IMG/VR virus record: IMGVR_UViG_3300032236_000747
Location: 248,001 to 312,000 of that record
Direction: 5' to 3' (one strand)
Length of the DNA: 64,000 nucleotides
Part shown: positions 1 through 16,720 of the stretch, one piece after another
Numbering within the stretch: the stretch's first letter is position 1
Layout: every line of letters begins with the position of its first letter
Notes under the pieces: generated by a model
Told to the model about the DNA's origin: nothing
Database searches by the model: none
The model's input: the letters and a program-made list of their open reading frames with translations, nothing else
Position numbers and translations under genes: made by a program

Positions 1-585
1 CAAGTTTTCAAATGCACTCCCGGGTACCCCCTCGGGGTCTCGGCCACCACTGTGTTCACTGCACGCTGCGTGCGACGCACGTGAGTAGCCCCGGGGTCTA
101 GCCATATATCGGCCTTGACCCCAGCCTCTGCGAAGATAAGAATTATTATCTCCTTGGGCGGCTTCCCCGGGGTCTGCCCCAAGAGTATGTGCACGCTGCG
201 TGTGTAGTATAGCGTGGCTACAGCTAGCAGCAGTGTAACAGCCCGCTCCCGCAGCAGTTCTTTCACGAGTGCAGAGTGAATGCTGCGTGGGGAGGGCCCG
301 TGAGTGTGTACTATATACGTAGCCTAGCACACTAGTGTAGTACACATGTACTAGTGCTAGCAGCTTACCATACAGCGATATATCTAGGAGTGCAATCAAC
401 TCTGCGTGGGGTTGTAAGGGAGCTATCCGTGTGTAGACCGCTGTGCTGCTGCTCGCTGCGGGGAAGATCATGCTAGGATCCCGGGGCAGCTCCTTGACAT
501 TTGTGGCCGGGGTCTCTGTGTTACCCCAGGAGCTACCGCGAAGGTAGTGCATGGTGGTTAGCAGCAAAAGTATTAGCAAAAGCAC
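1..585 (-). CDS. Partial ORF running off the window start (>=195 codons), hydrophobic N-terminus VLLLILLLLTTMH
   Basis: GTG at 585 preceded by AAGGAG and a sigma70 promoter (617-644); no in-frame stop from 585 to 1 by manual check; absent from the ORF track because it has no stop in the window. Confidence 0.45.
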   Translation of the reverse strand, partial: MLLLILLLLTTMHYLRGSSWGNTETPATNVKELPRDPSMIFPAASSSTAVYTRIAPLQPHAELIALLDISLYGKLLALVHVYYTSVLGYVYSTHSRALPTQHSLCTRERTAAGAGCYTAASCSHAILHTQRAHTLGADPGEAAQGDNNSYLRRGWGQGRYMARPRGYSRASHAACSEHSGGRDPEGVPGSAFENL

Positions 586-616
586 AGTGAGCTCCTTGTT
601 GTGTACTGACAGAGTC

Positions 617-644
617 AGTATAGCATAACTTTAGCTCTTGTCAA
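617..644 (-). promoter_or_regulatory. Early sigma70 promoter TTGACA-16-TATACT
   Basis: Consensus boxes on the minus strand; near-identical copy at 1653-1680. Confidence 0.8.
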
Positions 645-805
645 CCATTATTTTGATTTATTTTGGTAGACCCCGGCCAGGTCCTTAACTGCGTAGCACT
701 GTGGTCTTGTAAAACCCCGGTCAGGTCAACGATTGATCATCTGCGTGGTCTGCTGTTTAATTTAAAACCCCGGCCGCAAATTGTGCAGTAGTGCAGGGTG
801 ATCTC

Positions 806-943
806 TCAGGGATATATCTCGTGATATAACCGTTGTAGCTCAAACTGGTCTACCTCGTAGGCCGCCACGGTATCCTTGACCGCTTGTATATAATCGCAGC
901 CAAGGTCTAGGAGCTGTTTAAAGTGGATCACAGCCTCTGTCAT
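806..943 (-). CDS. Small hypothetical protein (45 aa, MTEAVIHFKQLL...)
   Basis: Manual translation; start overlaps the stop of the upstream ORF (ATGA). Confidence 0.6.
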   Translation of the reverse strand: MTEAVIHFKQLLDLGCDYIQAVKDTVAAYEVDQFELQRLYHEIYP

Positions 944-1029
944 TTGATGTACCTCTCTATATACCACACCTTAGCAGCAAAGATCACCACCACGGCTAGG
1001 GAGATCAAGATCACTTGTAGATCGCTCAT
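940..1029 (-). CDS. Small membrane peptide (29 aa, MSDLQVILISLAVVVIFAAKVW...)
   Basis: Manual translation; coupled to both neighbours; one hydrophobic segment. Confidence 0.55.
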   Translation of the reverse strand: MSDLQVILISLAVVVIFAAKVWYIERYIK

Positions 1030-1178
1030 CGTGCTAGCCTCACGGTGATGTCTGCGGAATAACCATCGTGTTTGATCAGTGCGCTGCGCACATCGTGTAA
1101 GGTCATGTCGCGGTCAAAGAACACGGTATCCACGATCTGACCGTTGCGGATAATGTCCCAGGCTTGCTGCTTGCTCAT
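1026..1178 (-). CDS. Hypothetical protein (50 aa, MSKQQAWDII...)
   Basis: Start moved from the track's 1355 to the ATG at 1178, which follows AAGGAG and lies downstream of the promoter at 1281-1309. Confidence 0.7.
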   Translation of the reverse strand: MSKQQAWDIIRNGQIVDTVFFDRDMTLHDVRSALIKHDGYSADITVRLAR

Positions 1179-1196
1179 CGTTGCTCCTTGAGGTGA

Positions 1197-1275
1197 AAAA
1201 GACCGCTGAGGGGAAGAACCACGGTTGCGGTACTGTGTACAGCACGGGCGGTGTGGCCCTAGGCCCCCAGCAGCA
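1197..1275 (-). ncRNA. Putative structured small RNA or leader between promoter and first gene
   Basis: GC-rich closing stem GCUGCUGGGG / CCCCUCAGCGGU followed by UUUUU; internal hairpins GGCC-UAG-GGCC and GUGCUG-UACA-CAGUAC. Confidence 0.4.
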
Positions 1276-1280
1276 GAGTT

Positions 1281-1309
1281 ATTATAACACGGTTTTACCA
1301 AGTTGTCAA
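1281..1309 (-). promoter_or_regulatory. Early sigma70 promoter TTGACA-17-TATAAT with TGGTAAAACC spacer motif
   Basis: Perfect consensus boxes. Confidence 0.85.
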
Positions 1310-1367
1310 CTGTGTTATTAAAATACTTGCTGACCTTGTCAAGGCCAGCGAGCACGTTAAGCGGGGT

Positions 1368-1619
1368 CTAGCAATCTGCGTCAAAATCTGCCCACTCCTG
1401 CGCTTCGTCGGGCTGACCGTCCCAGGCGCAATCTCGCTCGCGATCGCAGACCAATTCCCAGTAATCCTTGAGGGCGGCCATGGCGGCGGACAAGTTGCCG
1501 TTTGCCTCTGTGAGATACTGATCGTAGTCCTCAGCGCCAAAACACTCGTAGACCCAGTGCCCGCCGGCCTCGTAGTTGTCCAGTGCGTATTGCTCTAACA
1601 GTTTGATAGCTTGTGACAT
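1368..1619 (-). CDS. Hypothetical acidic early protein
   Basis: ORF with SD (AAGGA) and its own promoter. Confidence 0.8.
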   Translation of the reverse strand: MSQAIKLLEQYALDNYEAGGHWVYECFGAEDYDQYLTEANGNLSAAMAALKDYWELVCDRERDCAWDGQPDEAQEWADFDADC

Positions 1620-1652
1620 AGCGTTGTTCCTTGTTTGTTTACTGACAGAGTC

Positions 1653-1680
1653 AGTATAGCATAACTTTAACGTTTGTCAA
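1653..1680 (-). promoter_or_regulatory. Early sigma70 promoter, duplicate of 617-644
   Basis: TTGACA-16-TATACT within a ~50-bp repeat of 605-655. Confidence 0.8.
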
Positions 1681-1724
1681 CCATTATTTTAATTTATTTT
1701 TAGCCTAGCAAAAACCATGCTTTT

Positions 1725-1763
1725 AGACCCCGAGACGATTTCTCTGGATTTGCTCCGGGGTCT
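1725..1763 (-). terminator. Inverted repeat, possible terminator, built from two CGGGGTCT motifs
   Basis: AGACCCCG...CGGGGTCT just after the stop of 1769..2011. Confidence 0.45.
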
Positions 1764-1768
1764 TTGAA

Positions 1769-2011
1769 TTAGATCTCTTCAGCCTCTAATTCGTCTGCAG
1801 CAGCGATGAAATCGTCGATGAGATCAGCAATGCTGTTCTTACGTCGTTCGCTGCGCTTGCGTGGTTTGACCGAGGTGCCCTCTTGGTAGACCTTCCATAC
1901 ATGGTCTTTACAGTAGCTCTTACCTTCGATGCTAGCTTGGCAGCAGGTGGGATGATGACTCTCTGTGTTGTCCCCGATGAACTGGCAGAGTGGTTCGTGA
2001 TCGATCTTCAT
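1769..2011 (-). CDS. Hypothetical protein with Cys/His zinc-finger-like motif
   Basis: LCQF...TCC...YCKDH pattern. Confidence 0.7.
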   Translation of the reverse strand: MKIDHEPLCQFIGDNTESHHPTCCQASIEGKSYCKDHVWKVYQEGTSVKPRKRSERRKNSIADLIDDFIAAADELEAEEI

Positions 2012-2277
2012 TGTGGTCTCGCTTTGTTGTGTTCAAGGACGTCCGCTAGCTGGCCGCGTGCTGTAGCCAGTAGGGATCGCATGGTGATTAGCTCTTGCTC
2101 TGCTGCTTCCAAGGCCTCTATGTACTCGTGTGCTGCTGCTTGGTGGCCTTCCATGCGGCCTACTAGCTCTACAGCGCAAAACAAGCCCAGGAGACACATG
2201 AACTGCCACTCTTGCCAGCTGTAGCCTAACAAGTCAAGCAAGGTGCCCATAGTTGCGTACAAGAGCAAGCGTTGCAT
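2008..2277 (-). CDS. Hypothetical membrane protein
   Basis: Two hydrophobic segments; likely start at 2277 (TAATG overlap with the ATPase stop). Confidence 0.65.
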   Translation of the reverse strand: MQRLLLYATMGTLLDLLGYSWQEWQFMCLLGLFCAVELVGRMEGHQAAAHEYIEALEAAEQELITMRSLLATARGQLADVLEHNKARPQ

Positions 2278-3155
2278 TAGAGCATGTTCCTGCGCATACA
2301 TGTAGTCTTCGCCATGGCCTGCCAAGAAGCAGGGAATGCCTTCTTGAGATCGGCTATTTTAAGAACCATGCGCAAACTCAGCTCGCGCAGCTTGTCTTTA
2401 TACGTGTTAACGTAGTCTAGGATCTCTTGCTGCTCTACAGCGGGGTCTGTAAACTCGTACCTAGTTAACATTCCATCTGCGACTATGCTCTTGATCCACA
2501 AGAGTTTCTCTCGCATGGTATCCATCTGCAGATCGATATAGTGGCAGCGTGACTCAAGTGCGCTCAAGTGCTCACGTAGCTTCTTACTCTTCACGTGCTC
2601 GAACTTGATGTTCGTGATGAAGATCGCTGATCCCTTAAACTCAAAGCGATCAGGAATACCTTCCCCGCGCAGCATACGTGAATCCGTGTTCCAGGCGATC
2701 CAACGACGCTCGCTGCTGTCTAGGGCACCCTTGAGGATGTTGAGGCTTAGTTCATCGAGCAGGATCTGATCGCAGTCATCGAAGACCACCACGTGGTTCT
2801 CGTCGCTGTACTCGTAGAGTTTAGCGTAGAGGCCTAGCGCACTCATAGCGCCTTTAACAATCTCATACTTAGGTTTACGTTCCCCTAAGATATCAAAGAG
2901 GCCGTCCTTCTGAAGTACTGCTTCCACACCATAGCTCTTGCCAACACCGGGTGGGCCAGAAACAATCATCGCACGCACATCACCGCGCTTGATCGCCTTG
3001 GTCATCTCATTGAGGATCGTAAAACGTTCCTTGAGGCGAGTCAAGATCTCGTCATCGGTCTCTTGTTCTACCGCTAGCTCGCGTGCACGAATCGCATCGT
3101 GATCGAACTCGAGGATAGTTGTACCAGCTGAGGGTTTAGTATTTGCTTTTGCCAT
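2277..3155 (-). CDS. AAA-family P-loop ATPase
   Basis: Walker A GPPGVGKS, Walker B VVVFDDCD, sensor IFITN, SRC arginine-finger-like motif. Confidence 0.85.
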   Translation of the reverse strand: MAKANTKPSAGTTILEFDHDAIRARELAVEQETDDEILTRLKERFTILNEMTKAIKRGDVRAMIVSGPPGVGKSYGVEAVLQKDGLFDILGERKPKYEIVKGAMSALGLYAKLYEYSDENHVVVFDDCDQILLDELSLNILKGALDSSERRWIAWNTDSRMLRGEGIPDRFEFKGSAIFITNIKFEHVKSKKLREHLSALESRCHYIDLQMDTMREKLLWIKSIVADGMLTRYEFTDPAVEQQEILDYVNTYKDKLRELSLRMVLKIADLKKAFPASWQAMAKTTCMRRNML

Positions 3156-3183
3156 ATATTAATCCTGTGTTGTATAAAAATGT

Positions 3184-3212
3184 ATTATACAATTATTTAC
3201 GATATTTGTCAA
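3184..3212 (-). promoter_or_regulatory. Early sigma70 promoter TTGACA-17-TATAAT
   Basis: Perfect consensus upstream of the ATPase. Confidence 0.8.
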
Positions 3213-3417
3213 GAAGCAGGTTTGCCAGAGTTAGGTCTGTGACCTCGTCAAAGGCCTCCAAGATCATGATCAGCTTCATCGCGTGCATTCTATGATTGCG
3301 AGTAAGACGAATCATGTAGGCGATCTCAGCAATACTGGCCTGTTGTTCCCAAGCCTCCCACTCATCGGTAGGGGCCGTGAGCATCCAACGAAGGTTGTCC
3401 TCATCGTAGGGATTCAT
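3193..3417 (-). CDS. Hypothetical protein
   Basis: ORF in the co-oriented early array. Confidence 0.7.
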   Translation of the reverse strand: MNPYDEDNLRWMLTAPTDEWEAWEQQASIAEIAYMIRLTRNHRMHAMKLIMILEAFDEVTDLTLANLLLDKYRK

Positions 3418-3632
3418 TTATTATCGTTGGTGACCTTGGTTTTAAACAATAAACCAAACAGTATGTTAAGACCCCAGGCTTGTAGCCACGTGATCTCTTG
3501 TACGCCGGTGACTGCTCCTACAAGGCAACCATTCCATAACCAGTACACGGGCAACGATACCAGCATGCCAATCACAATGATCAGCAAGGCAGCGACCAGC
3601 AATGCGCCAACGACGGCAAATAGTTTATCCAT
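3414..3632 (-). CDS. Small two-TM membrane protein
   Basis: Two hydrophobic helices, WLWN...ITWLQAWGL; SD and TTGACG-17-TATAAT promoter at 3652-3680. Confidence 0.8.
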   Translation of the reverse strand: MDKLFAVVGALLVAALLIIVIGMLVSLPVYWLWNGCLVGAVTGVQEITWLQAWGLNILFGLLFKTKVTNDNK

Positions 3633-3660
3633 GTATTTCTCCTATGTGTATATTATACAC

Positions 3661-4008
3661 TCAAAGGGTTTCTACGTCAAAGAGCTTGGCCTTCAACTCA
3701 GTCAAGCGTGTGCGTGCATTGACCAGCGCAAGGTGGATTTGATCCTCTCCAAGGCCATCGGTCATGACCTCACGGGGATCTTCGTAGAGGCAACCGCCGA
3801 GGTATTCGCTGGCAACCTCAAGGCCGTCAAACATCACTCGCGTGCGCAGCATGAACCAATCGTAGATACCTAGGTCGATCTTGCGGATGATTTCGGCTAC
3901 GTCGTCTTCTTCAAAGAGATCACGTGGGCTAATATCCTCCCAGGTCTTGTCGAGAATCACAGTCAGACCGTTGCGTTCCACGGTAGCAATGTGTTCATAA
4001 TAGCGCAT
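3661..4008 (-). CDS. Hypothetical phage protein
   Basis: ORF with AAGGAG SD. Confidence 0.8.
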   Translation of the reverse strand: MRYYEHIATVERNGLTVILDKTWEDISPRDLFEEDDVAEIIRKIDLGIYDWFMLRTRVMFDGLEVASEYLGGCLYEDPREVMTDGLGEDQIHLALVNARTRLTELKAKLFDVETL

Positions 4009-4074
4009 CTTCGGCTCCTTGATCTAGGTTATACAGCGGGGTCTTATAGCACAAGGGCAGATGCCCCTGTGATT

Positions 4075-4359
4075 TCAGTTGTCGAAATAGCGATCGTTGG
4101 CCAGACTCAATCCCAACACGTCATTGAGATCGTCGTCGGCATATGCATACTCGCCTTCAAGGTCCTCAGTTGTGTCGTCAGTGGTTTCATCTTCTTCAAC
4201 GAAGTTGTTTGCGTGCATCATCTCTTCTACGTCTGCTTCGGGCATACGCTCAAGGCAGGCACGCAATGCGTCTGTGGGATCTACCAAACCCTCATCAACC
4301 ATGGTAAGGAGCTTGATGGTAAACTCGCGGCTACGACGTGCGGTGCTGAACATTGACAT
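4075..4359 (-). CDS. Hypothetical acidic protein
   Basis: Start moved to the ATG at 4359 after AAGGAG; promoter TTGACA-17-TATAAT at 4384-4412. Confidence 0.75.
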   Translation of the reverse strand: MSMFSTARRSREFTIKLLTMVDEGLVDPTDALRACLERMPEADVEEMMHANNFVEEDETTDDTTEDLEGEYAYADDDLNDVLGLSLANDRYFDN

Positions 4360-4421
4360 GACATTCTCCTTGTTAAAAACTGTATTATAACAAGGGCCGG
4401 AGCCCTTGTCAATCAAAGACC

Positions 4422-4889
4422 CTACCAACTGGAATGGTATTCAAAGTCCCAACCATCGCCAAACATAGCAAGAGTTGATTCAATCTCTGAGGCCGTACGG
4501 CGCAGGTCGTCCCAGTAGTATTCGTCGATGTCTGTGCTACCAAAGAAGAAGCCTGCTGCAGGAGGCAGTAACTTAGCGTTCTTGGTATCCAAGACCTCAA
4601 GGATCAGCTGATGCAGCTCGTTGAGTTTTTCGCGGCTAACATAGTAGTGGCCGCAGTTGTCTTCACCGGCTTGCACGTTCTTGACAAACCAGTCGTGGAT
4701 TTGATTGCTCTTGCGCCAGTAGATAGCTTCAGCGATGATCTCTTTGACTCTGCTAGAGGCATGACCCCAGCGGTCACAATCCTTGAGCTCGGGGAAGAGC
4801 GCCTGCACGGTGTTCGCGATCTGTTTGTCGGGGTGGTCCCCGTGTGTCCACAGATAGCGTTTAGCGTTCAAATACATATCCAATCCCAT
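4422..4889 (-). CDS. Conserved hypothetical phage protein (MGLDMYL... type)
   Basis: MGLDMYL, YWRK.NQIH.WF, GFFFGS, Y.SSW motifs typical of a widespread phage family; SD present. Confidence 0.85.
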   Translation of the reverse strand: MGLDMYLNAKRYLWTHGDHPDKQIANTVQALFPELKDCDRWGHASSRVKEIIAEAIYWRKSNQIHDWFVKNVQAGEDNCGHYYVSREKLNELHQLILEVLDTKNAKLLPPAAGFFFGSTDIDEYYWDDLRRTASEIESTLAMFGDGWDFEYHSSW

Positions 4890-4902
4890 GATCTACTCCT
4901 TG

Positions 4903-5148
4903 TTAACTGAAAACTTTTTTGTCGCCGGACTCTTCATTGAAGGCGTAACCTGCGTTGTACTCGCGTACTTCGTCGTCGGTCAGCTCTTGGCCTTCAATGA
5001 GGGGAGGATTGCCTGTACCGTTAGGGTACTTGTGTGGATTAGGCCTGCGACCATAGTAACTGTCTGCTGAGCCACGATCAAATGGATCGCCGTGTTTGAC
5101 CGTGTAGTTAACGCCTTTGTACTCAACTTGATAAAGTGCATCAAACAT
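4903..5148 (-). CDS. Hypothetical phage protein
   Basis: HG.PFDRGSADSYYGR motif; SD present. Confidence 0.8.
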   Translation of the reverse strand: MFDALYQVEYKGVNYTVKHGDPFDRGSADSYYGRRPNPHKYPNGTGNPPLIEGQELTDDEVREYNAGYAFNEESGDKKVFS

Positions 5149-5211
5149 CTTTCACTCCTTGTAAAACTGTATTATAACACAAAGAAAGGCATTTTGCAAT
5201 GCCCTTCCACT

Positions 5212-5562
5212 TTAGCTGGCTTCTAGCACCACGTTAAACTTGCGCTCCCATGCGCTTAAGAAGTTGCCGTCTACGTCACAACTAACGTAGTTGTCACCCT
5301 GCATGCCCTGCTCGCTATAGCTTACTGCGCACAAACCTTGTTCAGCTAAAAACTTATTAAGTTGCAGCATGAACAGTCTGTCTGTGTAGATCAGCCCGTC
5401 TTTGTTTACATTCCAGTCGCTGGTGTCAAAGTATACACGCAGCTCTCCGAAGTCTTTGTCATCGCTTACATACGCAATACGCATGTCTTCAACTTCTACT
5501 TCAGTTGCTTTGTTGCTCCAGTAACCGTCGCCGCAGGTCTCAAAGTAAACACGTTCAAACAT
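5212..5562 (-). CDS. Hypothetical phage protein
   Basis: GLIYTD...YSEQGMQG motif; SD present. Confidence 0.8.
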   Translation of the reverse strand: MFERVYFETCGDGYWSNKATEVEVEDMRIAYVSDDKDFGELRVYFDTSDWNVNKDGLIYTDRLFMLQLNKFLAEQGLCAVSYSEQGMQGDNYVSCDVDGNFLSAWERKFNVVLEAS

Positions 5563-5601
5563 ATTCGCTCCTTGTTAAAAACTGTAGTATAACATCTAAG
5601 A

Positions 5602-5629
5602 CACAGCGTAGCTATAACACTACGCTGTG
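5602..5629. repeat. 10-bp perfect inverted repeat (CACAGCGTAG / CTACGCTGTG)
   Basis: Intergenic hairpin between early genes. Confidence 0.7.
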
Positions 5630-5641
5630 AAGGGTTATTTT

Positions 5642-5791
5642 TTATGCTAGCAGTTCCTCGTCCTCCGTGTTATAATCGTCCTCTGCTAACTCTGCAAGCT
5701 CGTTGTCTAACTGCTCGCGTGCGTAAGCAGCAATTAACGCTTGCTCCGCGTTGTGGATGCGTTGTGTGCTTGTGCTGTCAAAAACTAGCAT
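5642..5791 (-). CDS. Small acidic protein (49 aa)
   Basis: ATG at 5791 after AAGGAG; promoter at 5819-5846. Confidence 0.7.
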   Translation of the reverse strand: MLVFDSTSTQRIHNAEQALIAAYAREQLDNELAELAEDDYNTEDEELLA

Positions 5792-5875
5792 AGTTTGCTC
5801 CTTGTTAAAAACAGCTTCATTATACAACACAAAACCCAGTTGTCAACCTCTTTTTTAAAATATTTTTAGGCCAAG

Positions 5876-5915
5876 AAAAACCCCGGAAAGATCCATCGAA
5901 GAACCTTCCGGGGTT
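5876..5915 (-). terminator. Rho-independent terminator
   Basis: AACCCCGGAA...TTCCGGGGTT followed by a T run on the minus strand. Confidence 0.6.
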
Positions 5916-5955
5916 AAGATGCCTGCGGGAGCGATTCGCAGGACTTGGAGCGATC

Positions 5956-6228
5956 TTAGATCGTGATGCCCAATGCCATGGCCTTGTAGCCTAATGCTAC
6001 GAGTTCTTGGCTTGGTTGGCCCATTACGTACTCAACGACATGAGCGTTGTTGCCAGCTGTGCGTTCCTTGCGATATACTGCGAAACCATGTTGGCGAACA
6101 CGACTTACCTCTGCGCTGATGTTCTTGATACCAAAACGCTTTTCGGCTTGACTAGCAGTGATACGCTCGCCTGCTTGTAGTGCTTTGAATAGCTTGTATG
6201 CCTTGGTTTCTTTACTGAACTTTTTCAT
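5956..6228 (-). CDS. Small basic HTH / winged-helix-like DNA-binding protein
   Basis: L..GERIT..QA..RFGI.N..AEVSRVR..G pattern. Confidence 0.6.
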   Translation of the reverse strand: MKKFSKETKAYKLFKALQAGERITASQAEKRFGIKNISAEVSRVRQHGFAVYRKERTAGNNAHVVEYVMGQPSQELVALGYKAMALGITI

Positions 6229-6271
6229 ATCATTTCCTTTTGTTATATACTGCTTAACAGTTATAACAATA

Positions 6272-6562
6272 TTACACGATTACTCGCTTTCTTGCAAGGA
6301 GTTTTTTATCCAATCGCGTACGACTTTGTCCAGTTGGTTGAGTGCTTCTTGCATTTGTTTCTCCAAATTCCTTAGTGACATAATACTTGATAAGGCTACG
6401 TTGAATCATCGTAACCAAATCGCCTGAATCGTCTGTGACGAATCTAACTGGACAACGCCCCCAAGTTCCCAGCCTTTGGAACTCTTCAAACCATCGTCTG
6501 TGGTTCTTAAGGCTAGGATCAAAGACTACCCAAGGTCTACCTATGTATGCGAGTTTGCTCAT
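6272..6562 (-). CDS. Hypothetical protein
   Basis: ORF in the array. Confidence 0.75.
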   Translation of the reverse strand: MSKLAYIGRPWVVFDPSLKNHRRWFEEFQRLGTWGRCPVRFVTDDSGDLVTMIQRSLIKYYVTKEFGETNARSTQPTGQSRTRLDKKLLARKRVIV

Positions 6563-6596
6563 GTGTAGAGGCCTTTACAGCGGGGTCTTTGCAAGT

Positions 6597-6965
6597 TCAG
6601 AGTGGCGCTGCTTCAAGTTCGGTGCTAGCTGCTAGAGCAACCCCGACTGGAGCCTCGATAGGAGCTGCCGGGGTCTTAGCCTTGGCCTTCTTCTCAGCTT
6701 TGGGTTTAGCAATCACACCGCGCTTCTCACCTGCTGCTTCCAATGCTGCGCGAACGGCTTTGTTGCCGTTGTCGAAGTCAATGCTCAACAAGTAGGCCAC
6801 AGTCTCGGCCTTGGTCATCGGATGCTTGAGCTCAACGATATCAATATCAGTGTGCCCATTCTTCTTCAGAACCTTGGTACGAAGAGCGTCGTTGCAGAAA
6901 CGAACTTTGAACTCGCCGTCTTGTTTTGAAACACCAGCATGTGAAAATTTAACGATTGTTGACAT
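6597..6965 (-). CDS. Hypothetical protein with Lys/Ala-rich tail
   Basis: SD GGAG; promoter TTGACA-17-TATACT at 7013-7041. Confidence 0.8.
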   Translation of the reverse strand: MSTIVKFSHAGVSKQDGEFKVRFCNDALRTKVLKKNGHTDIDIVELKHPMTKAETVAYLLSIDFDNGNKAVRAALEAAGEKRGVIAKPKAEKKAKAKTPAAPIEAPVGVALAASTELEAAPL

Positions 6966-7043
6966 ATTTAGATCTCCTATAATGTCCGGATTAATAAAAC
7001 TAATGAAACACTAGTATAGCATAATCTGGCCATTATGTCAACC

Positions 7044-7238
7044 TTAGGCCCCGTAGTAGGGGCTGTAGATCTCCTCAGCATGTGGCATTTCTGCCACAAC
7101 CTTAAAGCCTTCTTCCCGAGCCATTTCGGCCTCATCCAAGGTGAACACAGTGTAGAGATAGAGATCTCCGTCCCAGATTTGATAGCTCATTTGAAACTTG
7201 TCCTTTGATGCTTGCAGTTTTGCTCGGAAGCCGCTCAT
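7044..7238 (-). CDS. Hypothetical protein
   Basis: Start moved to the ATG at 7238 after AGGAG; promoter at 7261-7289. Confidence 0.7.
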   Translation of the reverse strand: MSGFRAKLQASKDKFQMSYQIWDGDLYLYTVFTLDEAEMAREEGFKVVAEMPHAEEIYSPYYGA

Positions 7239-7304
7239 GCTAGTTGCTCCTAAAACGTTTATTATACAGCCACGCTGGGGGACTGTCAATCCCCCAGTGC
7301 GAGC

Positions 7305-7673
7305 TTAACCTGCCGCAAAAGCCGCTAGGGCTTCCACTGCTCCGTCAACATTGTTGAACACAAAGCGATCATAGACCTGTTGCGCTTCTTTTTCCAGTTG
7401 CTCCGCATAGTCGTTGAGAGCTTGCTTTTTGGCTTCCAGTTGCGGCCACACAATATCGTCTGTGATCATGTAAGGGCGTGTGCAGGTTTCCGTTCCCTCT
7501 TTGAGCACTAGCTCGCCTGCTTTAATAGCATCAAAGACCATGCCCCAGGTGATGTGATATGGGCTACCACCCTTGCCAAACAGCTCGTCTTGTTTAGCCT
7601 GCATCTTAGCCTCTGTGATTGCGTTAAGGCGTGCGCGGAGGTGTGTGCGTTGCTCTTGCGAAAGTTCAGTCAT
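7305..7673 (-). CDS. Hypothetical protein
   Basis: SD and promoter TTGACA-17-TATAAT at 7699-7727. Confidence 0.8.
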   Translation of the reverse strand: MTELSQEQRTHLRARLNAITEAKMQAKQDELFGKGGSPYHITWGMVFDAIKAGELVLKEGTETCTRPYMITDDIVWPQLEAKKQALNDYAEQLEKEAQQVYDRFVFNNVDGAVEALAAFAAG

Positions 7674-7738
7674 TTAATGCTCCTTGTTAAAAACGTTTAT
7701 TATACAGTGGTTTTACCAGTCTGTCAACAGATCTAGTA

Positions 7739-8152
7739 TTACTTGACTAGAGCGTAGGGTTTATCCCAACGACCGATGTTGATGTCAACGTAGTGGCTGC
7801 AGTGAAAGTAGTCTGTCATTGAATCACTGTGATCAAAGTAGTCCGGCCCCTTGAGCGCTGCTACAGCAGCAACGAGAAAGTCCTTGGCCTTGCCGTCAAA
7901 GTGCTCATGACACCAGTATGTGTTGATCTGCAGATAGTCACGATCTACATTGCGTGGACTGTTGTTGTAGCGTGGCTGCGCTGCGCATACTCTATTAGTA
8001 TTGCCAATGAAGTCAATGCTGCCCTGCTTGACAGTAAGTACCAAAGTACTGTGATTGTTCACACTCAACGAACCCTTGAGACCGTACTGCTTGAGCAGGG
8101 CCTTGATGGTGGGTGCGATCTTAGCTTTCATTTCCTGACTTACGTATGCCAT
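7739..8152 (-). CDS. Conserved hypothetical phage protein
   Basis: MAYVSQE...SDSMTDYF...INIGRWDKPY; SD and promoter at 8176-8204. Confidence 0.85.
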   Translation of the reverse strand: MAYVSQEMKAKIAPTIKALLKQYGLKGSLSVNNHSTLVLTVKQGSIDFIGNTNRVCAAQPRYNNSPRNVDRDYLQINTYWCHEHFDGKAKDFLVAAVAALKGPDYFDHSDSMTDYFHCSHYVDINIGRWDKPYALVK

Positions 8153-8228
8153 ACACTGCTCCTTGTAAAACGTTTATTATATAGTGGTTTTACCAGTTTG
8201 TCAACCACTATTTTAAAGTTTTTTCAAT

Positions 8229-8498
8229 TTAGATCACTTCCAACAAGCTAGCGGAAACTCTCCAATTCACTGTGGGAGTAGCGACTACAACGTTTTTGGG
8301 TCCAATGCTTTTAACAGTGCCCTGCTCAAGTCTTCCACCCCGGCCGGTGAATTGAACTCGTGCACCAATGGTCAGCTTGCGGATAATACCAGCAGCTACT
8401 CGGCTGCGTGCGAACTTAAGGGCATCGTTGAGCTCAGTAACCTGTTCTGCTGTGAATGCGCCTGTTACGATTGCTGCTTTGATAGTGGCAAAGTCCAT
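8229..8498 (-). CDS. Hypothetical protein with C-terminal SH3/KOW-like barrel
   Basis: L.IGARVQF...GTVK.I..KNVVV...WRV; ATG at 8498 after AAGGAG; promoter at 8524-8552. Confidence 0.7.
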   Translation of the reverse strand: MDFATIKAAIVTGAFTAEQVTELNDALKFARSRVAAGIIRKLTIGARVQFTGRGGRLEQGTVKSIGPKNVVVATPTVNWRVSASLLEVI

Positions 8499-8558
8499 GA
8501 TCAACTCCTTGTTAAAAAACACTATTATACACTAGGTTTTACCAGTTGTCAACCACTA

Positions 8559-8738
8559 TTATTCATCGTCCTCTTCATCTAGATCATCGCCCTCGGGATC
8601 CCAATCATCAATGAGATCACCCGGGCACACAGCGTATTCTCCAGAACACACCACGATGCCATCCACGATCTTCCAAGCGAAGAACAAGAAGAATACTAGG
8701 CCAAACCACCACTGCAGGCTGTGCGGTCTATGTTTCAT
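8559..8738 (-). CDS. Small membrane protein with acidic C-terminus (59 aa)
   Basis: Manual translation MKHRPHSLQWWFGLVFFLFFAWKIVDG...DDLDEEDDE. Confidence 0.6.
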   Translation of the reverse strand: MKHRPHSLQWWFGLVFFLFFAWKIVDGIVVCSGEYAVCPGDLIDDWDPEGDDLDEEDDE

Positions 8739-8749
8739 ATATATTAAGA

Positions 8750-8826
8750 TGGTGCGTCGAACAGGGCTCGAACCTGTGACCCAGCGATTATGAGTCGCTT
8801 GCTCTAACCAACTGAGCTATCAACGC
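8750..8826 (-). tRNA. tRNA with CAT anticodon, most likely tRNA-Ile2 (lysidine type)
   Basis: Cloverleaf: acceptor GCGTTGA/TCGACGC, D arm AGCTCAGTTGGTTAGAGC, anticodon arm AGCGA-CTCATAA-TCGCT (ileX-like), T loop GGTTCGAGCC, encoded CCA; own promoter at 8839-8867. Confidence 0.92.
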
Positions 8827-8850
8827 ATCATAGTATCTATTATACAGCCT

Positions 8851-9078
8851 CTAGGCCCGTTTGTCAACCTTAGCAGCGGGGTCTCTACGTATATACCTAT
8901 ATACTCGTTCATAGATGATCGAATCCTCAGCAGCTAGCTCAGTTAACATGCCCACAAGTAGTCCCAACTCATAGACAACCTTTAGGTGATGATCCCGATC
9001 TCGATACTCACTACTAGCTAGTCTAGCATTGAGCATATCATAGATGTGCTGCTGTATACGTTGATGACGATGATCCAT
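8851..9078 (-). CDS. Hypothetical protein
   Basis: Start moved to the ATG at 9078, which sits 5 nt below a TAAATA late-promoter motif. Confidence 0.65.
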   Translation of the reverse strand: MDHRHQRIQQHIYDMLNARLASSEYRDRDHHLKVVYELGLLVGMLTELAAEDSIIYERVYRYIRRDPAAKVDKRA

Positions 9079-9084
9079 GCTAGT

Positions 9085-9680
9085 ATTTACATACACGTAT
9101 ATAACTCACATAGTGCTAGTACACGTATGTATATACACATACACGTATATACACTGTGTAGCGTATATACAACACTGTATAAAATCACAGTTGACAACTC
9201 ACACATATACATATACGTATACTAGCCATATGCACGCAGCGGGGTCTTATACAGTGTATATAGATCTACCTAGACTCACAGTATATACAGTGATCTATGG
9301 TGGGAGAACCGTGGGAAAGAATCAGGAAGATTCTAGGCCGAAACGGTGGAAAATATGGCCTGAAAAACCGTGAAAATGTTGTTTTTATCATGAATTAAGG
9401 TAAAAAATATCTTGACCATTTTGGAGAGGCAGGCTATGCACAAATACCCCAAGCCATTAACTGCTCAGATAACCGAGTTATCCACAGCCTATCCACAGCC
9501 TATCCACAACCTTTACACAGCTTGTTCATAGTTCAACGTTCTCACAGCTTCTCTACTGTATATACGTATATGTGTATATGCCTTATACACGCAGCGGGGT
9601 CTTATACTGTGTATACGCATACACATAGACTTACAGTGAGTTTCTAGACTAGTCTATGTGTATATGTGTATATACGTACT
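9085..9680. other. Putative replication origin or DnaA-binding locus
   Basis: Non-coding; alternating purine-pyrimidine tracts on both sides; direct repeat ACGCAGCGGGGTCTTATAC at 9234 and 9589; three AAC(C/G)GTG(G/A) repeats at 9306, 9341 and 9365; AT-rich segment; DnaA-box array; near the gene-strand switch. Confidence 0.5.
9478..9530 (+). repeat. DnaA-box array with 11-bp period
   Basis: TTATCCACA (9478), CTATCCACA (9489), CTATCCACA (9500), CTTTACACA (9511), TTGTTCATA (9522), each separated by 2 bp. Confidence 0.7.
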
Positions 9681-10266
9681 AGTAGGTTACGCCCAGAGCT
9701 TTGCGTCCAGGACTAGCATGATCACCACAAGCATAGGTCTTTTCGTAGTGACACATCATACACAGAGTTTGGAGATTTGAAGGATCATTGTTAGTGGGAT
9801 TACCATCTATGTGATCTACCTGCAGCTGACCTGTGAGTCTTATAGTATGTGTGCAAGGATATCCTAGTACGTGTCCGTCCAGATTTTCACAGTGATCTTT
9901 GCGATATTGACGATATGGATGCTGGCTGTTCTTCCAATCAACATAGCTTTTAAAGCCTTCTTTGTGTGCGCAGACATCGTGCACAGTTTTAACCCACTCA
10001 GCATCAGGGTGTTTGGCCGCGTATTTTCTTGCTGTATTAGCATCGTGACAGCTCTTGCACACAGTTCTATACACAGGTTTTGCCGAAGTCCAGTGCCAAT
10101 CTTGTACGATTCTTGGGTTGGTGCACTGTGGAGTTGAGCAAGTGGGATGTTCAGTTAGGTCGTTGTAGCTGGGATGTCTGCGTCTAGGTGTGCCCTGTTC
10201 GCGAGCTAGATTGCGTGCTGTTTTATGATTAAGGGCGTTGAGTTCTTTGATTGTATAACGTGCCAT
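9679..10266 (-). CDS. HNH endonuclease with N-terminal Zn-finger motifs
   Basis: LQVDHIDGNPTNNDPSNLQTLCMMCH; additional CxxC motifs. Confidence 0.8.
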   Translation of the reverse strand: MARYTIKELNALNHKTARNLAREQGTPRRRHPSYNDLTEHPTCSTPQCTNPRIVQDWHWTSAKPVYRTVCKSCHDANTARKYAAKHPDAEWVKTVHDVCAHKEGFKSYVDWKNSQHPYRQYRKDHCENLDGHVLGYPCTHTIRLTGQLQVDHIDGNPTNNDPSNLQTLCMMCHYEKTYACGDHASPGRKALGVTY

Positions 10267-10375
10267 GATGAGTGTATAATGCTAAAAAATCTGCGCTGAG
10301 TGCTAGCGCACACATGTACAAATATACAGTATTCCCGGTTAGTCTTCAACGACAAGGTTTGCCATAAATATCCTT

Positions 10376-11815
10376 ATGCGCTACAATGAATTTGTTATCA
10401 AGGAAGACTTTGGCTATGCTTGGAGATTTGAGAATCCTCCCGGGGCTTTGCCAGTTAAACTAGCCACTAATACCAACCGTGAGGGCTTTATCGACGCAGA
10501 GACTTGGCCCGCAGAGGACGGCCGGGGTGTGATGCTACATCTACACTCTGTGGCCGCAGGCTGGTATTTCAGTGACGATCCCATAGAAGGATGGGTGGAC
10601 TTTGTCTGCAACATCGACAATGTCAAGGGGGGTAAGATCACTGAAACAGACTACTCCAATCCCAGCAACAGCTATGAACCCGAGCTTGATTATGACACAC
10701 TGTGGGGTGAAATCACTGAGCTGGTTGACTACTTTCGCAAGGCCTATGGTAATACCTGGAAAGAAGTAGAAGATGAGCTAGTGGGCGGGTGGACTGTTGA
10801 CGAAGCTAGAGAACCTCAACCCTCGCTGTGGCCAGGTAGATTGGGTCCACAACGTGATCTCAGCACAGAAGAAATAGACCATATCACGGACTTTACACTG
10901 AGCTGGGACTTTGACGGCCACGACGAGAACTATGATCCCTACAGGGCCTTTGAAGATGCCAGCCACGATGAACTAGGCGATGCTGTACAGGTACACTGGG
11001 GAAATCTTCTGGATGCCAGCGGGCTAGCCACTGACTATTCTAGACTATCTAGCCCTGATGCAGACAATGTGGCCCGTCTTTTGGAACTCCTAGATGATGC
11101 CCGCAAGGAAGCTGAACAGGTCTGGGAAAGCAGGATCGTTGAAACACCACAGGACGAAAACGCCATACACGAACTAGCCCAGGGTATAATCAAATGGCTG
11201 TTAGATCACATAGACAGCATACGTGATGGCTACATAGGCGGGGGTGACCTCAAGGGTGTGATAAACATAGGCACCATAGAGGACCTCACGGGCTATCTAC
11301 GCAAGCATAGAAAACAGGGCTCTATCAATGACGTGCATGGGCGTGATGCTGCTGCCCTAGAGACCATAGTCAAAGATACCCGCATGGGCCTAATACACCC
11401 CATGCCCGATGATGCTGAGGGTGCCTACAACGCAGGCCTCAAGTTCCTTATCTTGGATCTAGAACTGGTTAAAAAGAGCCCACCACGCATGTTGGGCACT
11501 ATCATGCATGAACTACGCCATGCCCTAGACTCCAGCAAGAGCAATGATCGCTTCAATAAAAAAGACGATGCCAAGAACTATATATTTCAGCCTCTTGAGA
11601 TCAACGCACGTTTTACACAGGCCCTAGACGATATACGCAAAATGGCGGCCAAGAACCCCCAGCCCGAGCTGCTCATGGATATCATCAAGTTCAACCTGAA
11701 CAAACACAATATACGACAGATATTCCCCGGGGGTACAAAAAGCCCCAGATATCGCAGACTAGTTAACAGAGTGTACCAGCAACTAGAGTACCATAAAGGA
11801 AAGACCAAGCCATGA
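10376..11815 (+). CDS. Putative internal head protein with C-terminal HEXXH metallopeptidase-like domain
   Basis: IMHELRHALD...EINARF; N-terminus MRYNEFVIKE; TAAATA-N5-ATG. Confidence 0.65.
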   Translation: MRYNEFVIKEDFGYAWRFENPPGALPVKLATNTNREGFIDAETWPAEDGRGVMLHLHSVAAGWYFSDDPIEGWVDFVCNIDNVKGGKITETDYSNPSNSYEPELDYDTLWGEITELVDYFRKAYGNTWKEVEDELVGGWTVDEAREPQPSLWPGRLGPQRDLSTEEIDHITDFTLSWDFDGHDENYDPYRAFEDASHDELGDAVQVHWGNLLDASGLATDYSRLSSPDADNVARLLELLDDARKEAEQVWESRIVETPQDENAIHELAQGIIKWLLDHIDSIRDGYIGGGDLKGVINIGTIEDLTGYLRKHRKQGSINDVHGRDAAALETIVKDTRMGLIHPMPDDAEGAYNAGLKFLILDLELVKKSPPRMLGTIMHELRHALDSSKSNDRFNKKDDAKNYIFQPLEINARFTQALDDIRKMAAKNPQPELLMDIIKFNLNKHNIRQIFPGGTKSPRYRRLVNRVYQQLEYHKGKTKP

Positions 11816-14801: not shown

Positions 14802-14864
14802 GTGTCTCTACCTTATACAGTATACTACACTGTATAGAAACACATGTCAAAGTTTTTGAGCGTC

Positions 14865-15641: not shown

Positions 15642-15673
15642 TATAGTACTTCCTTTGTAATATTTACAACTCC

Positions 15674-15713
15674 ATTGTACACGATTGACAGATCCTGGTC
15701 AATAGTGTATAAT
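15674..15713. promoter_or_regulatory. Overlapping divergent sigma70 promoters
   Basis: Plus strand TTGACA(15685)-17-TATAAT(15708); minus strand TTGACC(15702)-17-TACAAT(15679); the two -35 boxes form the palindrome ATTGAC-N8-GTCAAT. Confidence 0.75.
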
Positions 15714-16713: not shown

Positions 16714-16720
16714 ATAATGG

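What the first reader, a model, noticed from the sequence alone, without database searches (positions are those of the whole stretch)
33..9602. Polarised octamer CGGGGTCT concentrated in the first 9.6 kb
Seen on the plus strand at 33, 92, 168, 508, 1362, 1756, 2441, 4037, 6581, 6669, 8877, 9240 and 9595, and on the minus strand at 668 and 1725. Six copies extend to (A/G)CAGCGGGGTCT, and some lie inside coding sequence. Well under one copy per strand is expected by chance in 10 kb. I noticed none in the remaining 54 kb, though that scan was not exhaustive. Inference: it is an oriented protein-binding signal, for example for DNA entry, packaging, Chi/KOPS-like protection or an early regulator.
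Basis: seen in the sequence. Interest (0 to 1): 0.62.

Follow-up and report, generated by a model that had tools for sequence, protein, structure and literature searches.

The report
Oriented motif marking phage early block
A short DNA word repeated in one direction is real, conserved in related uncultivated giant phages and confined to one 10-kb block of early genes, so it is a genuine but still unassigned control signal.

Summary
CGGGGTCT occurs 13 times on + and twice on - between 33 and 9602. It occurs nowhere else in the window or in the 354,680-bp genome; 0.7 copies are expected.

The region is the only leftward block of small genes in an uncultivated T4-superfamily jumbo phage. At least 14 near-consensus sigma-70 promoters drive it. 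On the gene strand the word reads AGACCCCG. Six copies carry the longer core GACCCCGCTG(Y).

That core recurs in about 19 related metagenomic loci, 59 times in the sense orientation and never antisense. In whole related records it lies only beside the same block. It persists while flanks diverge, and it has been written into coding sequence.

The copies form three groups:
- a head cluster in an untranslated, palindrome-rich stretch with DnaA boxes;
- scattered copies just after stop codons;
- a tail array in a structured GC-rich stretch.

It is not a promoter. It is not over-represented in 106 sampled proteobacterial genomes.

Best reading (confidence about 0.35): oriented protein sites on DNA that delimit a T5-first-step-transfer-like, possibly terminally redundant, early block. 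Assembly depth fits a twofold copy of exactly this interval. RNA-level and origin or priming readings remain open.

The parts
9595..9602 (+). Motif copy, class A. The full element on the - strand is AAGACCCCGCTGC. Head cluster, inside the 78-nt repeat 9560-9637.
9240..9247 (+). Motif copy, class A. Head cluster, inside the 78-nt repeat 9205-9282, 355 bp from copy 9595.
8877..8884 (+). Motif copy, class A. Head cluster, 363 bp from copy 9240. It ends 5 nt before the -35 box of the sigma-70 promoter of tRNA-Met.
6669..6676 (+). Motif copy, class B (AGACCCCGG), inside ORF 6597..6965 (frame K-T-P). It pairs with CGGGGT 23 nt downstream in the predicted RNA.
6581..6588 (+). Motif copy, class A. It lies 9 nt after the stop of ORF 6597..6965 and 15 nt before the ATG of ORF 6272..6562. 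It is conserved at the same place in G001 and G002 although the flanks differ.
4037..4044 (+). Motif copy, class A. It lies 31 nt after the stop of ORF 4075..4428 and follows a hairpin. The same gene is followed by the motif in L003 and L004.
2441..2448 (+). Motif copy, class A, inside the AAA+ ATPase gene (codons D-P-A-V). These residues occur only in motif-bearing lineages.
1756..1763 (+). Motif copy, class B, 12 nt after the stop of ORF 1769..2011. It forms an 8-bp stem with the inverted copy at 1725.
1725..1732 (-). Inverted copy, hairpin partner of copy 1756.
1362..1369 (+). Motif copy (AGACCCCGCTT). It overlaps the stop codon of ORF 1368..1619 and lies 13 nt before a terminator-like hairpin (1349..1329).
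668..675 (-). Inverted copy, class B, 24 nt upstream of the -35 box of promoter P644.
33..515 (+). Tail array: four class B copies (33, 92, 168, 508), each inside a GC-rich hairpin stem.
1..620 (-). GC-rich (0.56) untranslated, strongly structured stretch transcribed from sigma-70 promoter P644. Its long ORFs have no homologue in relatives. It matches in position the 8-copy class A array of relative G016.
8827..9678 (.). Head untranslated region. It holds GTATAC-type direct and inverted repeats, three motif copies, DnaA boxes, and blocks conserved with G001 and L103.
9478..9508 (+). Three tandem DnaA-type boxes at 11-bp spacing: TTATCCACA, then CTATCCACA twice.
600..10266 (-). Early block of about 25 small genes on the - strand, with 14 near-consensus sigma-70 promoters (TTGACA-N16/17-TATAAT) and a shared leader TTTTTAACAAGGAG.
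8750..8826 (-). tRNA-Met (CAT), the first gene downstream of the head cluster. The same order is found in L103.

Best explanation
CGGGGTCT is the visible part of a strand-specific element. On the strand of the early genes it reads (A)AGACCCCGCTG(Y); the part shared by all 15 copies here is AGACCCCG. It is a lineage-specific cis-acting recognition site that marks one 10-kb segment. That segment is the only leftward, host-RNA-polymerase (sigma-70) driven early-gene block of an uncultivated T4-superfamily jumbo phage.

The copies form three groups. A head cluster of three copies about 360 bp apart sits in an untranslated, palindrome-rich region with DnaA boxes. Single copies are scattered in the short spacers after stop codons. 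A tail array sits in a structured GC-rich untranslated stretch next to the convergent terminator.

I think the sites are most likely bound on DNA by a sequence-specific protein. I think they act with a directional process that treats this block as a unit, and that the block is the counterpart of the T5 first-step-transfer / terminal-repeat segment. On this reading the block is probably terminally redundant and first to enter. The head region with DnaA boxes would be its inner boundary, and the oriented arrays would delimit, anchor or protect it.

Shown: existence, polarity, restriction to the block, conservation and selection, the three-part architecture, and the association with DnaA boxes. 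Inferred: protein binding, action at DNA level, terminal redundancy, and the role in entry or end processing.
For: - All 15 genomic copies lie in 9.6 kb. Only the exact word is enriched.
- The 10-mer GACCCCGCTG occurs in the whole records of relatives only beside the homologous block and on one strand: 5, 6, 2, 2 and 3 copies in G001-G005, and likewise in G016-G020.
- Across 19 related loci there are 59 sense copies and 0 antisense. One-mismatch variants are few, lie on the sense strand, and differ at the edge positions.
- The motif persists between orthologous genes while the flanks diverge. It was created inside the ATPase and the glycosyltransferase-like gene in different frames.
- It is specific to this block. 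The genome has 46 other strong sigma-70 promoters on the + strand with no motif near them.
- The head region resembles the T5 injection-stop region. It is untranslated, full of direct and inverted repeats, carries DnaA boxes (3 here, 8-9 in L103), has an HNH gene beside it, and its repeats are better conserved than the ORFs.
- A 5'-deoxynucleotidase gene flanks the block; compare T5 dmp.
- G016 has the same layout, with an 8-copy tail array next to a convergent terminator.
- In the probable source run, the contig covering window -3253..8831 has depth 26.4 and its right neighbour 15.8. The ratio is 1.67. A twofold interval from about -160..0 to 9680..10300 predicts 1.63-1.68.
- The closest cultured relative, PA5oct, has a long terminal repeat full of early genes (PMC7318152).
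Against: - No raw reads were available. Terminal redundancy therefore rests on two contig-mean depths, which GC bias or strain mixtures could also explain.
- Most relatives that share the same block lack the motif, so it is not needed for the block as such.
- No cognate protein was found. wHTH identity does not track the motif. The AAA+ ATPase is a generic clamp-loader/ORC/RuvB-type fold.
- T5 itself has no such word. In PA5oct the homologous ATPase region lies outside the terminal repeat.
- The sense-only orientation, and the position right after stop codons or just before terminators, would fit an RNA-level signal equally well.
Confidence: 0.35

Rival explanations
1. An RNA-level or transcription-coupled signal. 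The element is read in the early transcripts, or on the non-template strand, by an RNA-binding or polymerase-associated factor. It would define or protect 3' ends, process polycistronic early mRNAs, or modulate termination or translation of the next cistron. The untranslated head and tail would then be multi-site RNAs.
For: - All copies are sense to the genes around them, 59:0 in relatives and 13:2 here.
- Sixteen of 59 copies lie within about 30 nt after a stop codon, and 13 of these within -2..12 nt. Several use their own TGA as the stop.
- Copies sit just before terminators or at transcript ends: 1362 here; three tandem copies in L103, the last of which forms the 5' arm of an intrinsic terminator; and the 8-copy array in G016 about 50 nt before a terminator.
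- Class A copies are mostly unpaired in local folds. The tail is a structured RNA-like stretch under its own promoter.
- PA5oct has long non-coding RNAs, one next to the homologous ATPase block.
Against: - The motif is absent from all other sigma-70-promoter regions of the same genome, so it is not a general early-mRNA element.
- Copies lie inside essential-looking genes, the ATPase and mid-gene in the glycosyltransferase-like ORF. Cleavage or termination sites there would be harmful.
- In longer folds the motif is no less paired than its surroundings, and sense and antisense folds do not differ.
- No antisense partner sequence exists in the genomes.
- No RNA data were available.
Confidence: 0.25
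2. A replication element. The copies would be iteron-like initiator sites and/or defined priming sites around a DnaA-box origin at the head of the block. The + strand reads CAGCGGGGTCT. That is a DnaG-type CTG site on the - strand template, or a T7-gp4-type GGGTC site on the + strand. In either case the 10-11 conserved nucleotides match the length of a primer.
For: - Direct repeats in one orientation flank tandem DnaA boxes and AT-rich palindromic DNA.
- L103 has 8-9 DnaA boxes in 125 bp, and tandem copies at 34-bp spacing.
- G016 has 8 copies in 570 bp.
- DnaA-box clusters occur only in motif-bearing lineages.
- A DnaG-like primase and a DnaB-like helicase are encoded 3-5 kb to the left.
- The local GC-skew minimum is at window 9556.
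- The primase recognition rules are from my own knowledge of E. coli DnaG and T7 gp4.
Against: - The spacing of 355 and 363 bp in the window is unlike iterons.
- Scattered copies over 9 kb and a tail array are not explained.
- No initiator gene was identified next to the sites.
- The skew minimum simply follows the change of gene strand.
- G005 and G002 have their clusters inside or beside a coding gene without DnaA boxes.
- In T5 the comparable DnaA boxes are thought not to be an origin.
Confidence: 0.15
3. A Chi-like hotspot. The G-rich strand CAGCGGGGTC(T) would be recognised by the host RecBCD/AddAB enzyme entering from the head-side end. That would stop degradation and start recombination within the block. 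The head cluster would be the first barrier and the tail array the last.
For: - The word is short, G-rich and asymmetric, and strictly one orientation.
- Clusters lie at both edges of the block.
- The block is possibly terminally redundant.
- Properties of Chi are from my own knowledge.
Against: - CGGGGTCT is not over-represented against its reversed control in 5 genomes, and is under-represented in three of them (two Acinetobacter, one Paraglaciecola).
- GCGGGGTC is never more than about twofold over control in 101 evenly drawn genomes of the class. One of these, G064, is unpublished.
- The conserved element is 10-13 nt, longer than known Chi sites.
- Unrelated phages did not show it except by chance or coding repeats.
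- Many close relatives lack it.
- The host is unknown, so the test is incomplete.
Confidence: 0.07
4. A compact phage-specific (middle-type) promoter, recognised by host polymerase with a phage factor or by a phage polymerase.
For: - The copies are co-oriented with the genes.
- Several lie 9-28 nt upstream of start codons. One gene (the G001 orthologue of ORF 6272..6562) has no Shine-Dalgarno sequence behind it.
- In G002 the motif stands where the window has a sigma-70 promoter.
- An A-rich 5' flank and a Y-A-W-A 3' flank recall single-subunit polymerase promoters (the comparison is from my own knowledge).
Against: - There is no -10-like element at a fixed distance.
- The element is 80% G+C.
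- In L103 there are three tandem copies 34 bp apart, the last being part of a terminator hairpin.
- Eight copies lie within 570 bp ahead of a terminator in G016.
- No T7-like RNA polymerase was detected, though the control search did not ring either.
- Class B copies lack any AT-rich 3' flank.
Confidence: 0.06
5. No function. The word would be a by-product of composition, of GC-rich terminator hairpins, or of a recently spread small repeat.
For: - The block is GC-richer than the genome.
- Class B copies are arms of CCCCGG/CCGGGG hairpins, and related AAACCCCGG terminator halves exist.
Against: - Shuffles expect 0.7 copies.
- One-mismatch words are not enriched.
- The flanks of the copies are unrelated, so it is not a mobile repeat.
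- The 10-mer is invariant across lineages whose ATPase is only 70-83% identical.
- It was created independently in coding and non-coding places.
Confidence: 0.02

Closest known systems
Untranslated repeat regions and injection-stop signal of the T5 first-step-transfer DNA (left terminal repeat)
   Same: Both are blocks of about 10 kb of small genes transcribed by host polymerase from very strong sigma-70 promoters. [quoted passage not shown] Both have clustered DnaA boxes at one boundary, an HNH endonuclease gene beside a repeat region, and a 5'-deoxynucleotidase nearby.
   Different: There is no sequence similarity, and T5 has no single oriented word peppered through the block. Terminal redundancy and two-step entry are unproven here. 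This phage belongs to the T4 superfamily / PA5oct-related jumbo group, not the T5 group. Homologues of T5 A1 and A2 were not sought. The role of the T5 repeats is itself only hypothesised (bioRxiv 10.1101/866236).
Chi sites (RecBCD/AddAB crossover hotspot instigators)
   Same: Both are short, G-rich, asymmetric words that act only in one orientation. Several copies close together would raise the chance of recognition.
   Different: Chi is defined by the host and is abundant and skewed in the host chromosome. No such excess was found in 106 sampled genomes. The conserved element here is longer (10-13 nt), and only some lineages of the phage group carry it.
Iterons of plasmid and phage theta-type origins (for example P1, RK2, lambda ori)
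   Same: Both are direct repeats in one orientation next to DnaA boxes and AT-rich DNA. Extra copies lie outside the core, and copies can lie inside coding sequence.
   Different: Spacing is hundreds of bp rather than about 22 bp in most genomes. No adjacent initiator gene was found. Copies are spread over 9-10 kb with a second array at the far end.
PeSL (promoter-early stem-loop) cassettes of T4-type phages (Arbiol et al. 2010, cited from memory)
   Same: Both are repeated, co-oriented regulatory modules between small, fast-evolving early ORFs. The block itself has such repeated sigma-70 promoter and leader modules.
   Different: The octamer is not part of the promoter or leader module. It has no promoter features, and it is restricted to a subset of lineages.
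nut / ops-type antitermination signals
   Same: Both are short conserved words read only in the sense orientation of transcription units. Their invariance could reflect a conserved host partner.
   Different: Here almost every gene has its own promoter. Copies sit at the 3' ends of cistrons and before terminators rather than promoter-proximally. There is no boxB-like hairpin next to class A copies.

Membership tests
Chi site | Short asymmetric G-rich oligomer with uniform orientation towards a DNA end | tested here: inconclusive
   The G-rich strand and uniform polarity are met. The position of DNA ends is unknown because no raw reads exist.
Chi site | Strong over-representation and strand skew in the host chromosome | tested here: inconclusive
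   No excess over the reversed control in 5 + 101 proteobacterial genomes (one genome, G064, is unpublished). The host is not identified.
Chi site | Recognition by host RecBCD/AddAB with attenuation of nuclease activity | not testable with these tools
   Needs biochemistry or genetics.
T5-type first-step-transfer / terminal-repeat block | About 10-kb block of small genes under strong host-type promoters | tested here: met
   14 near-consensus sigma-70 promoters and about 25 small ORFs in window 600..10266.
T5-type first-step-transfer / terminal-repeat block | Untranslated repeat- and palindrome-rich region with clustered DnaA boxes at a boundary | tested here: met
   Window 8827-9678 with three boxes at 9478-9508. 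L103 has 8-9 boxes. For comparison.
T5-type first-step-transfer / terminal-repeat block | Terminal redundancy: twofold coverage with fixed ends | tested here: inconclusive
   The contig depth ratio of 1.67 fits a twofold interval of about -160..9700. Only contig means are available, and GC bias is not excluded.
T5-type first-step-transfer / terminal-repeat block | Two-step DNA transfer that depends on block-encoded proteins (A1/A2) | not tested
   No homology search against A1 or A2 was run. The phenotype needs an isolate.
Origin iterons | Direct repeats of one orientation adjacent to DnaA boxes and AT-rich DNA | tested here: met
Origin iterons | Regular short spacing in helical phase (about 20-25 bp) | tested here: not met
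   Spacing is 355 and 363 bp in the window, 279-424 bp in G002 and G005, 34 bp only in L103, and 41-108 bp in G016.
Origin iterons | Cognate initiator gene next to the repeats | tested here: inconclusive
   Neighbouring ORFs have no informative family matches. The AAA+ ATPase has a clamp-loader/ORC-like fold but is generic.
Promoter (sigma-70, T4 middle/late or single-subunit polymerase type) | AT-rich melting element or -10 box at a fixed distance, and a start site downstream | tested here: not met
   No conserved -10-like element. Tandem copies merge into a terminator. Start sites could not be tested.
Promoter (single-subunit polymerase type) | Phage-encoded T7-like RNA polymerase | tested here: inconclusive
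   PF00940 was not found in the genome, but the control genomes did not ring either.
KOPS / FtsK-orienting sequences | Genome-wide skewed distribution pointing to a terminus | tested here: not met
   All copies lie within 9.6 kb of a 355-kb genome.
PeSL early promoter cassettes | The motif is part of the repeated sigma-70 promoter and stem-loop unit | tested here: not met
   Promoter and leader repeat families D1, D2, D4 and D5 do not contain the word.
nut / ops antitermination signals | Promoter-proximal position in long operons, with a hairpin (boxB) or pause context | tested here: not met
   Copies lie after stop codons and before terminators, nearly every gene has its own promoter, and class A copies are unpaired without an adjacent conserved hairpin.

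The most novel reading that the evidence does not exclude
A clade of uncultivated T4-superfamily jumbo phages has a T5-like, terminally redundant 'first-entering' early block of about 10 kb. The boundaries and interior of this block are marked by an invariant oriented 10-13-nt word. The head cluster with DnaA boxes and the tail array would act as directional stop, anchor or protection signals for DNA translocation or end processing. This would be a cis-acting system with no described counterpart in this phage group and no known binding protein.
Probability: 0.25. Interest if true: 0.8.

Novelty: new variant of a known kind. Interest (0 to 1): 0.62.

Why it matters
Cis-acting signals in jumbo-phage genomes are almost unknown. 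Most relatives of this phage are uncultivated, and their early regions are treated as strings of hypothetical ORFs.

This finding gives:
- a precise, invariant and testable DNA word;
- a defined architecture of head cluster, scattered copies and tail array;
- a set of about 20 natural variants.

If the block proves to be terminally redundant and first to enter, T5-type staged entry logic would extend to a T4-related jumbo lineage. It would also supply a sequence handle for finding the protein that reads the signal.

If the signal is instead read on RNA or used for priming, it would be a new kind of early-operon or origin signal.

In either case the word is a simple marker for locating this block, and perhaps the genome ends, in metagenomic assemblies.

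Tried and rejected
**Steps that led nowhere**
- DNA similarity to 50,697 phage records: none.
- Rfam: only the tRNA.
- Literature search for the word and the 10-mer: only primers and unrelated sequences.
- A lineage-specific equivalent word in relatives that lack the motif: only promoter and leader repeats found.
- An analogous motif in PA5oct: none. My first guess that the PA5oct ATPase lies in its terminal repeat was wrong; the repeat covers gp1-105.
- A trans-acting antisense RNA: no inverted copy of the 10-mer anywhere in the relatives' records.
- An RNA 'sponge' with exposed motifs: the motif is no less paired than its surroundings.
- Gene-motif co-occurrence profiling: uninformative with fragmentary loci.
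- wHTH as the specificity factor: no correlation.
- T7-like RNA polymerase: not found.
- Host identification through the AlgH-like gene (no hit) and the phage DnaK (75-81% to many Gamma- and Betaproteobacteria, not diagnostic).
- Chi-type over-representation: not seen.

**Side results set aside**
- The IMG/VR scan for motif pairs also returned chance or coding hits in high-GC contigs, and a CRISPR-like array whose repeat contains the 10-mer. These were set aside as unrelated.
- A sigma-54-like reading of the conserved head block fits L103 and L101 but not the window or G001, by my own inspection.
- Complex prediction was not used, because no candidate pair justified it.

Full report
**1. Observation**

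CGGGGTCT occurs at exactly the 15 reported places. Thirteen copies are on + between 33 and 9602, and two are on - at 668 and 1725. Dinucleotide-preserving shuffles expect 0.69.

The window is positions 248001-312000 of a single 354,680-bp virus contig. All 15 copies in that genome lie in these 9.6 kb. One-mismatch versions are at background. AGACCCCG is the commonest 8-mer of the region.

**2. What the region is**

Window 600-10266 carries about 25 small ORFs, all on the - strand. At least 14 near-consensus sigma-70 promoters on that strand drive them, nine of them 12/12 matches. They share a leader, TTTTTAACAAGGAG.

The block contains:
- a tRNA-Met;
- an HNH endonuclease and a small wHTH protein;
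- an AAA+ ATPase homologous to T4 nrdC.10, 47% identical to a PA5oct protein. Its fold is of the clamp-loader/ORC/RuvB type.

To the left, + strand genes encode a DnaG-like primase, a DnaB-like helicase, an AlgH-like protein and a 5'-deoxynucleotidase. They end at a terminator that converges on the block.

This is the host-polymerase early block of a T4-superfamily jumbo phage assembled from a metagenome. It is the only cluster of strong leftward promoters: 13 of the 15 on that strand. Another 46 strong promoters on the + strand lie elsewhere, and none has the motif nearby. On the gene strand the word reads AGACCCCG.

**3. The real element and its conservation**

Eighty related IMG/VR loci were fetched through the ATPase. 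In the closest ones the word appears as GACCCCGCTG, in the orientation of the genes.

Whole-record scans find this 10-mer only beside the homologous block, always on one strand: 5, 6, 2, 2 and 3 copies in G001-G005. The 7-mer elsewhere is at background. Nine other relatives have none.

A scan of IMG/VR for two copies 321-351 bp apart recovered eleven more relatives. It also returned chance hits in high-GC contigs and an unrelated CRISPR-like array. Their records show the same restriction.

Over 19 loci (255 kb) there are 59 sense and 0 antisense copies. The few one-mismatch variants lie on the sense strand and differ at the edge positions. The consensus is aAAGACCCCGCTG-Y-A.

The motif is under selection:
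- It is kept between orthologous genes while the neighbouring bases differ. It follows the ORF 6597 orthologue in the window, G001 and G002, and the ORF 4075 orthologue in the window, L003 and L004.
- The ATPase has D-P-A-V at the motif only in motif-bearing lineages.
- In G002, G005, L088 and L101 copies were created in two frames inside a glycosyltransferase-like gene. That gene's window homologue lacks them.

**4. Two classes and a three-part layout**

Six window copies are class A, with the full 10-mer: 2441, 4037, 6581, 8877, 9240 and 9595. Nine share only AGACCCCG and are class B, mostly AGACCCCGG.

Class B copies are arms of GC-rich hairpins, with pairing probability 0.6-0.99. Class A copies are mostly unpaired.

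The layout has three parts.

*(a) Head cluster.* Copies 9595, 9240 and 8877 are spaced 355 and 363 bp apart in an untranslated region. The region is rich in GTATAC-type direct and inverted repeats. It has three tandem DnaA-type boxes at 9478-9508.
- G001 and L103 have the same arrangement, with conserved blocks between the first two copies.
- L103 adds three tandem copies at 34-bp spacing that run into an intrinsic terminator, followed by a sigma-70 promoter and tRNA-Met.
- L103 also has 8-9 DnaA boxes in 125 bp.
- DnaA-box clusters were found only in motif-bearing lineages.

*(b) Scattered copies.* These lie mostly a few nucleotides after stop codons.

*(c) Tail array.* Copies 33, 92, 168 and 508 lie in a 0.56-GC, strongly structured stretch (z = -3.6) under its own promoter. 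The stretch has no homologue. G016 has eight class A copies within 570 bp at the equivalent place, next to the convergent terminator, and scattered copies upstream. This links the two classes.

**5. What it is not**

- *Not a promoter.* There is no -10-like element at a fixed distance, tandem copies merge into a terminator, and no phage RNA polymerase was seen.
- *Not part of the repeated early promoter modules*.
- *Not a target of a trans antisense RNA*.
- *Not a general early-mRNA element*.
- *Chi-like use is unsupported.* The word is not over-represented against its reversed control in five genomes, nor in 101 evenly drawn genomes of the class reached through the phage DnaK. One of the 101, G064, is unpublished, and only the collective negative result rests on it. 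The host remains unknown.

**6. Most likely mechanism**

The block resembles the T5 first-step-transfer segment. Both are about 10 kb of small genes under very strong host-type promoters. Both have untranslated repeat and palindrome regions better conserved than the ORFs. Both have clustered DnaA boxes at one boundary, an adjacent HNH gene, and a deoxynucleotidase nearby. PA5oct, the closest isolate, has a long terminal repeat of early genes, although its ATPase region lies outside that repeat.

In the probable source run, the contig covering window -3253..8831 has mean depth 26.4, and the next contig (8802 to about 30700) has 15.8. The ratio is 1.67. A twofold interval bounded by the convergent terminator (about -160..0) and the head region (9680..10300) predicts 1.63-1.68. 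That is the motif-bearing interval.

This is only a lead. It rests on two contig means, and GC bias or strain mixture could give the same figure. The contig break itself lies in the tRNA gene. Gene order across the break is the same in independent assemblies, so a chimeric join is unlikely.

I therefore favour oriented protein sites on DNA that delimit, and act within, a T5-like and possibly terminally redundant early block (0.35).

The rivals are:
- an RNA-level or transcription-coupled element (0.25), supported by the sense-only orientation and the positions after stop codons and before terminators;
- origin iterons or defined priming sites (0.15). The reverse complement reads as a DnaG-type CTG or T7-type GGGTC site plus a primer-length tract; the recognition rules are from my own knowledge;
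- a Chi-like site (0.07);
- a promoter (0.06);
- no function (0.02).

**7. Novelty and verdict**

I found no description of this word or of such an arrangement.

It is a real, conserved, oriented cis-element. It is specific to one early block of a subset of an uncultivated jumbo-phage clade. I file it as a new variant of known kinds of phage cis-signals: repeat regions of terminal or early segments, iterons, and Chi-like words. Its reader and role are unknown.

No binding test was run and no structural complex was attempted.

Noticed in passing
window 9478-9508; L103 3222-3345; L084 (G001) near 10090-10120: There are tandem DnaA boxes at the head of the early block: three here at 11-bp spacing, and 8-9 in 125 bp in L103, arranged as two opposed groups. 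Among about 95 related loci such clusters occur only in motif-bearing lineages. They could be an origin, a DnaA sink, or a T5-like membrane anchor.
   Followed up: partly
window 600-8900, - strand: Fourteen near-consensus sigma-70 promoters share a conserved spacer (TGGTAAAACC) and a common leader, TTTTTAACAAGGAG. Relatives have their own lineage-specific versions. This looks like the PeSL-type repeated early modules of T4-type phages.
   Followed up: partly
window 1-620, - strand: A 0.56-GC stretch under promoter P644 folds far better than shuffles (z = -3.6). Its long ORFs have no homologues. It may be a long non-coding RNA. PA5oct has an annotated 619-nt lncRNA next to its homologous ATPase block.
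   Followed up: partly
window about -3253..8831 against 8802..30700 (run X1): Logan contig depths are 26.4 and 15.8, a ratio of 1.67. The break lies in the tRNA-Met gene, where short side contigs of depth 6-9 share 30-mers.
   Followed up: partly
L001 10392-10892 and 9068-9634 (genome 246392-246892 and 245068-245634): A 5'-deoxynucleotidase (NT5C family) with its own sigma-70 promoter, and an AlgH-like (DUF179) protein, lie just left of the block. The nucleotidase recalls T5 dmp.
   Followed up: no
window 9679-10266, - strand: A free-standing HNH endonuclease gene lies directly beside the head repeat region. In T5 an HNH gene splits two repeat regions of the terminal repeat.
   Followed up: no
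genome 1-60 and 353816-354679: The contig starts inside a tRNA gene and ends inside a phage-encoded DnaK gene that is 75-81% identical to proteobacterial DnaK. The contig ends are therefore assembly breaks, not genome termini, and there is no terminal overlap.
   Followed up: partly
window 20000-32000: This segment is markedly AT-rich (0.34 GC) against 0.40 for the genome and 0.49 for the early block. The genome is compositionally mosaic.
   Followed up: no
L089 and L098 (IMG/VR contigs of 60,787 bp, 0.68 GC): A 22-unit array with 72-bp period looks like a CRISPR array on a viral contig. Its roughly 36-nt repeat happens to contain GACCCCGCTG. It is unrelated to this phage group.
   Followed up: no
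L109 3-404 and 2093-2629: The DnaB-like helicase of relative G016 matches in two pieces 1.7 kb apart. It may carry an intein or an inserted gene. The source-sample contig also breaks inside the helicase gene of this genome.
   Followed up: no
L103 about 2010-2045; L101, L088 and window about 9420-9450: A conserved head-region block, AATGGTTGGCACCATTT-AGCATAGCCT, is a near-palindrome. In L103 and L101 it also fits the spacing of a sigma-54 -24/-12 promoter. The window and G001 versions do not fit.
   Followed up: partly
window 12982-13932 and 18036-19094: A Dam-like DNA methyltransferase and a radical-SAM protein lie to the right of the block. Glycosyltransferase-like genes lie at 12219-13010 and 14865-15641. 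This hints at DNA or surface modification functions.
   Followed up: no
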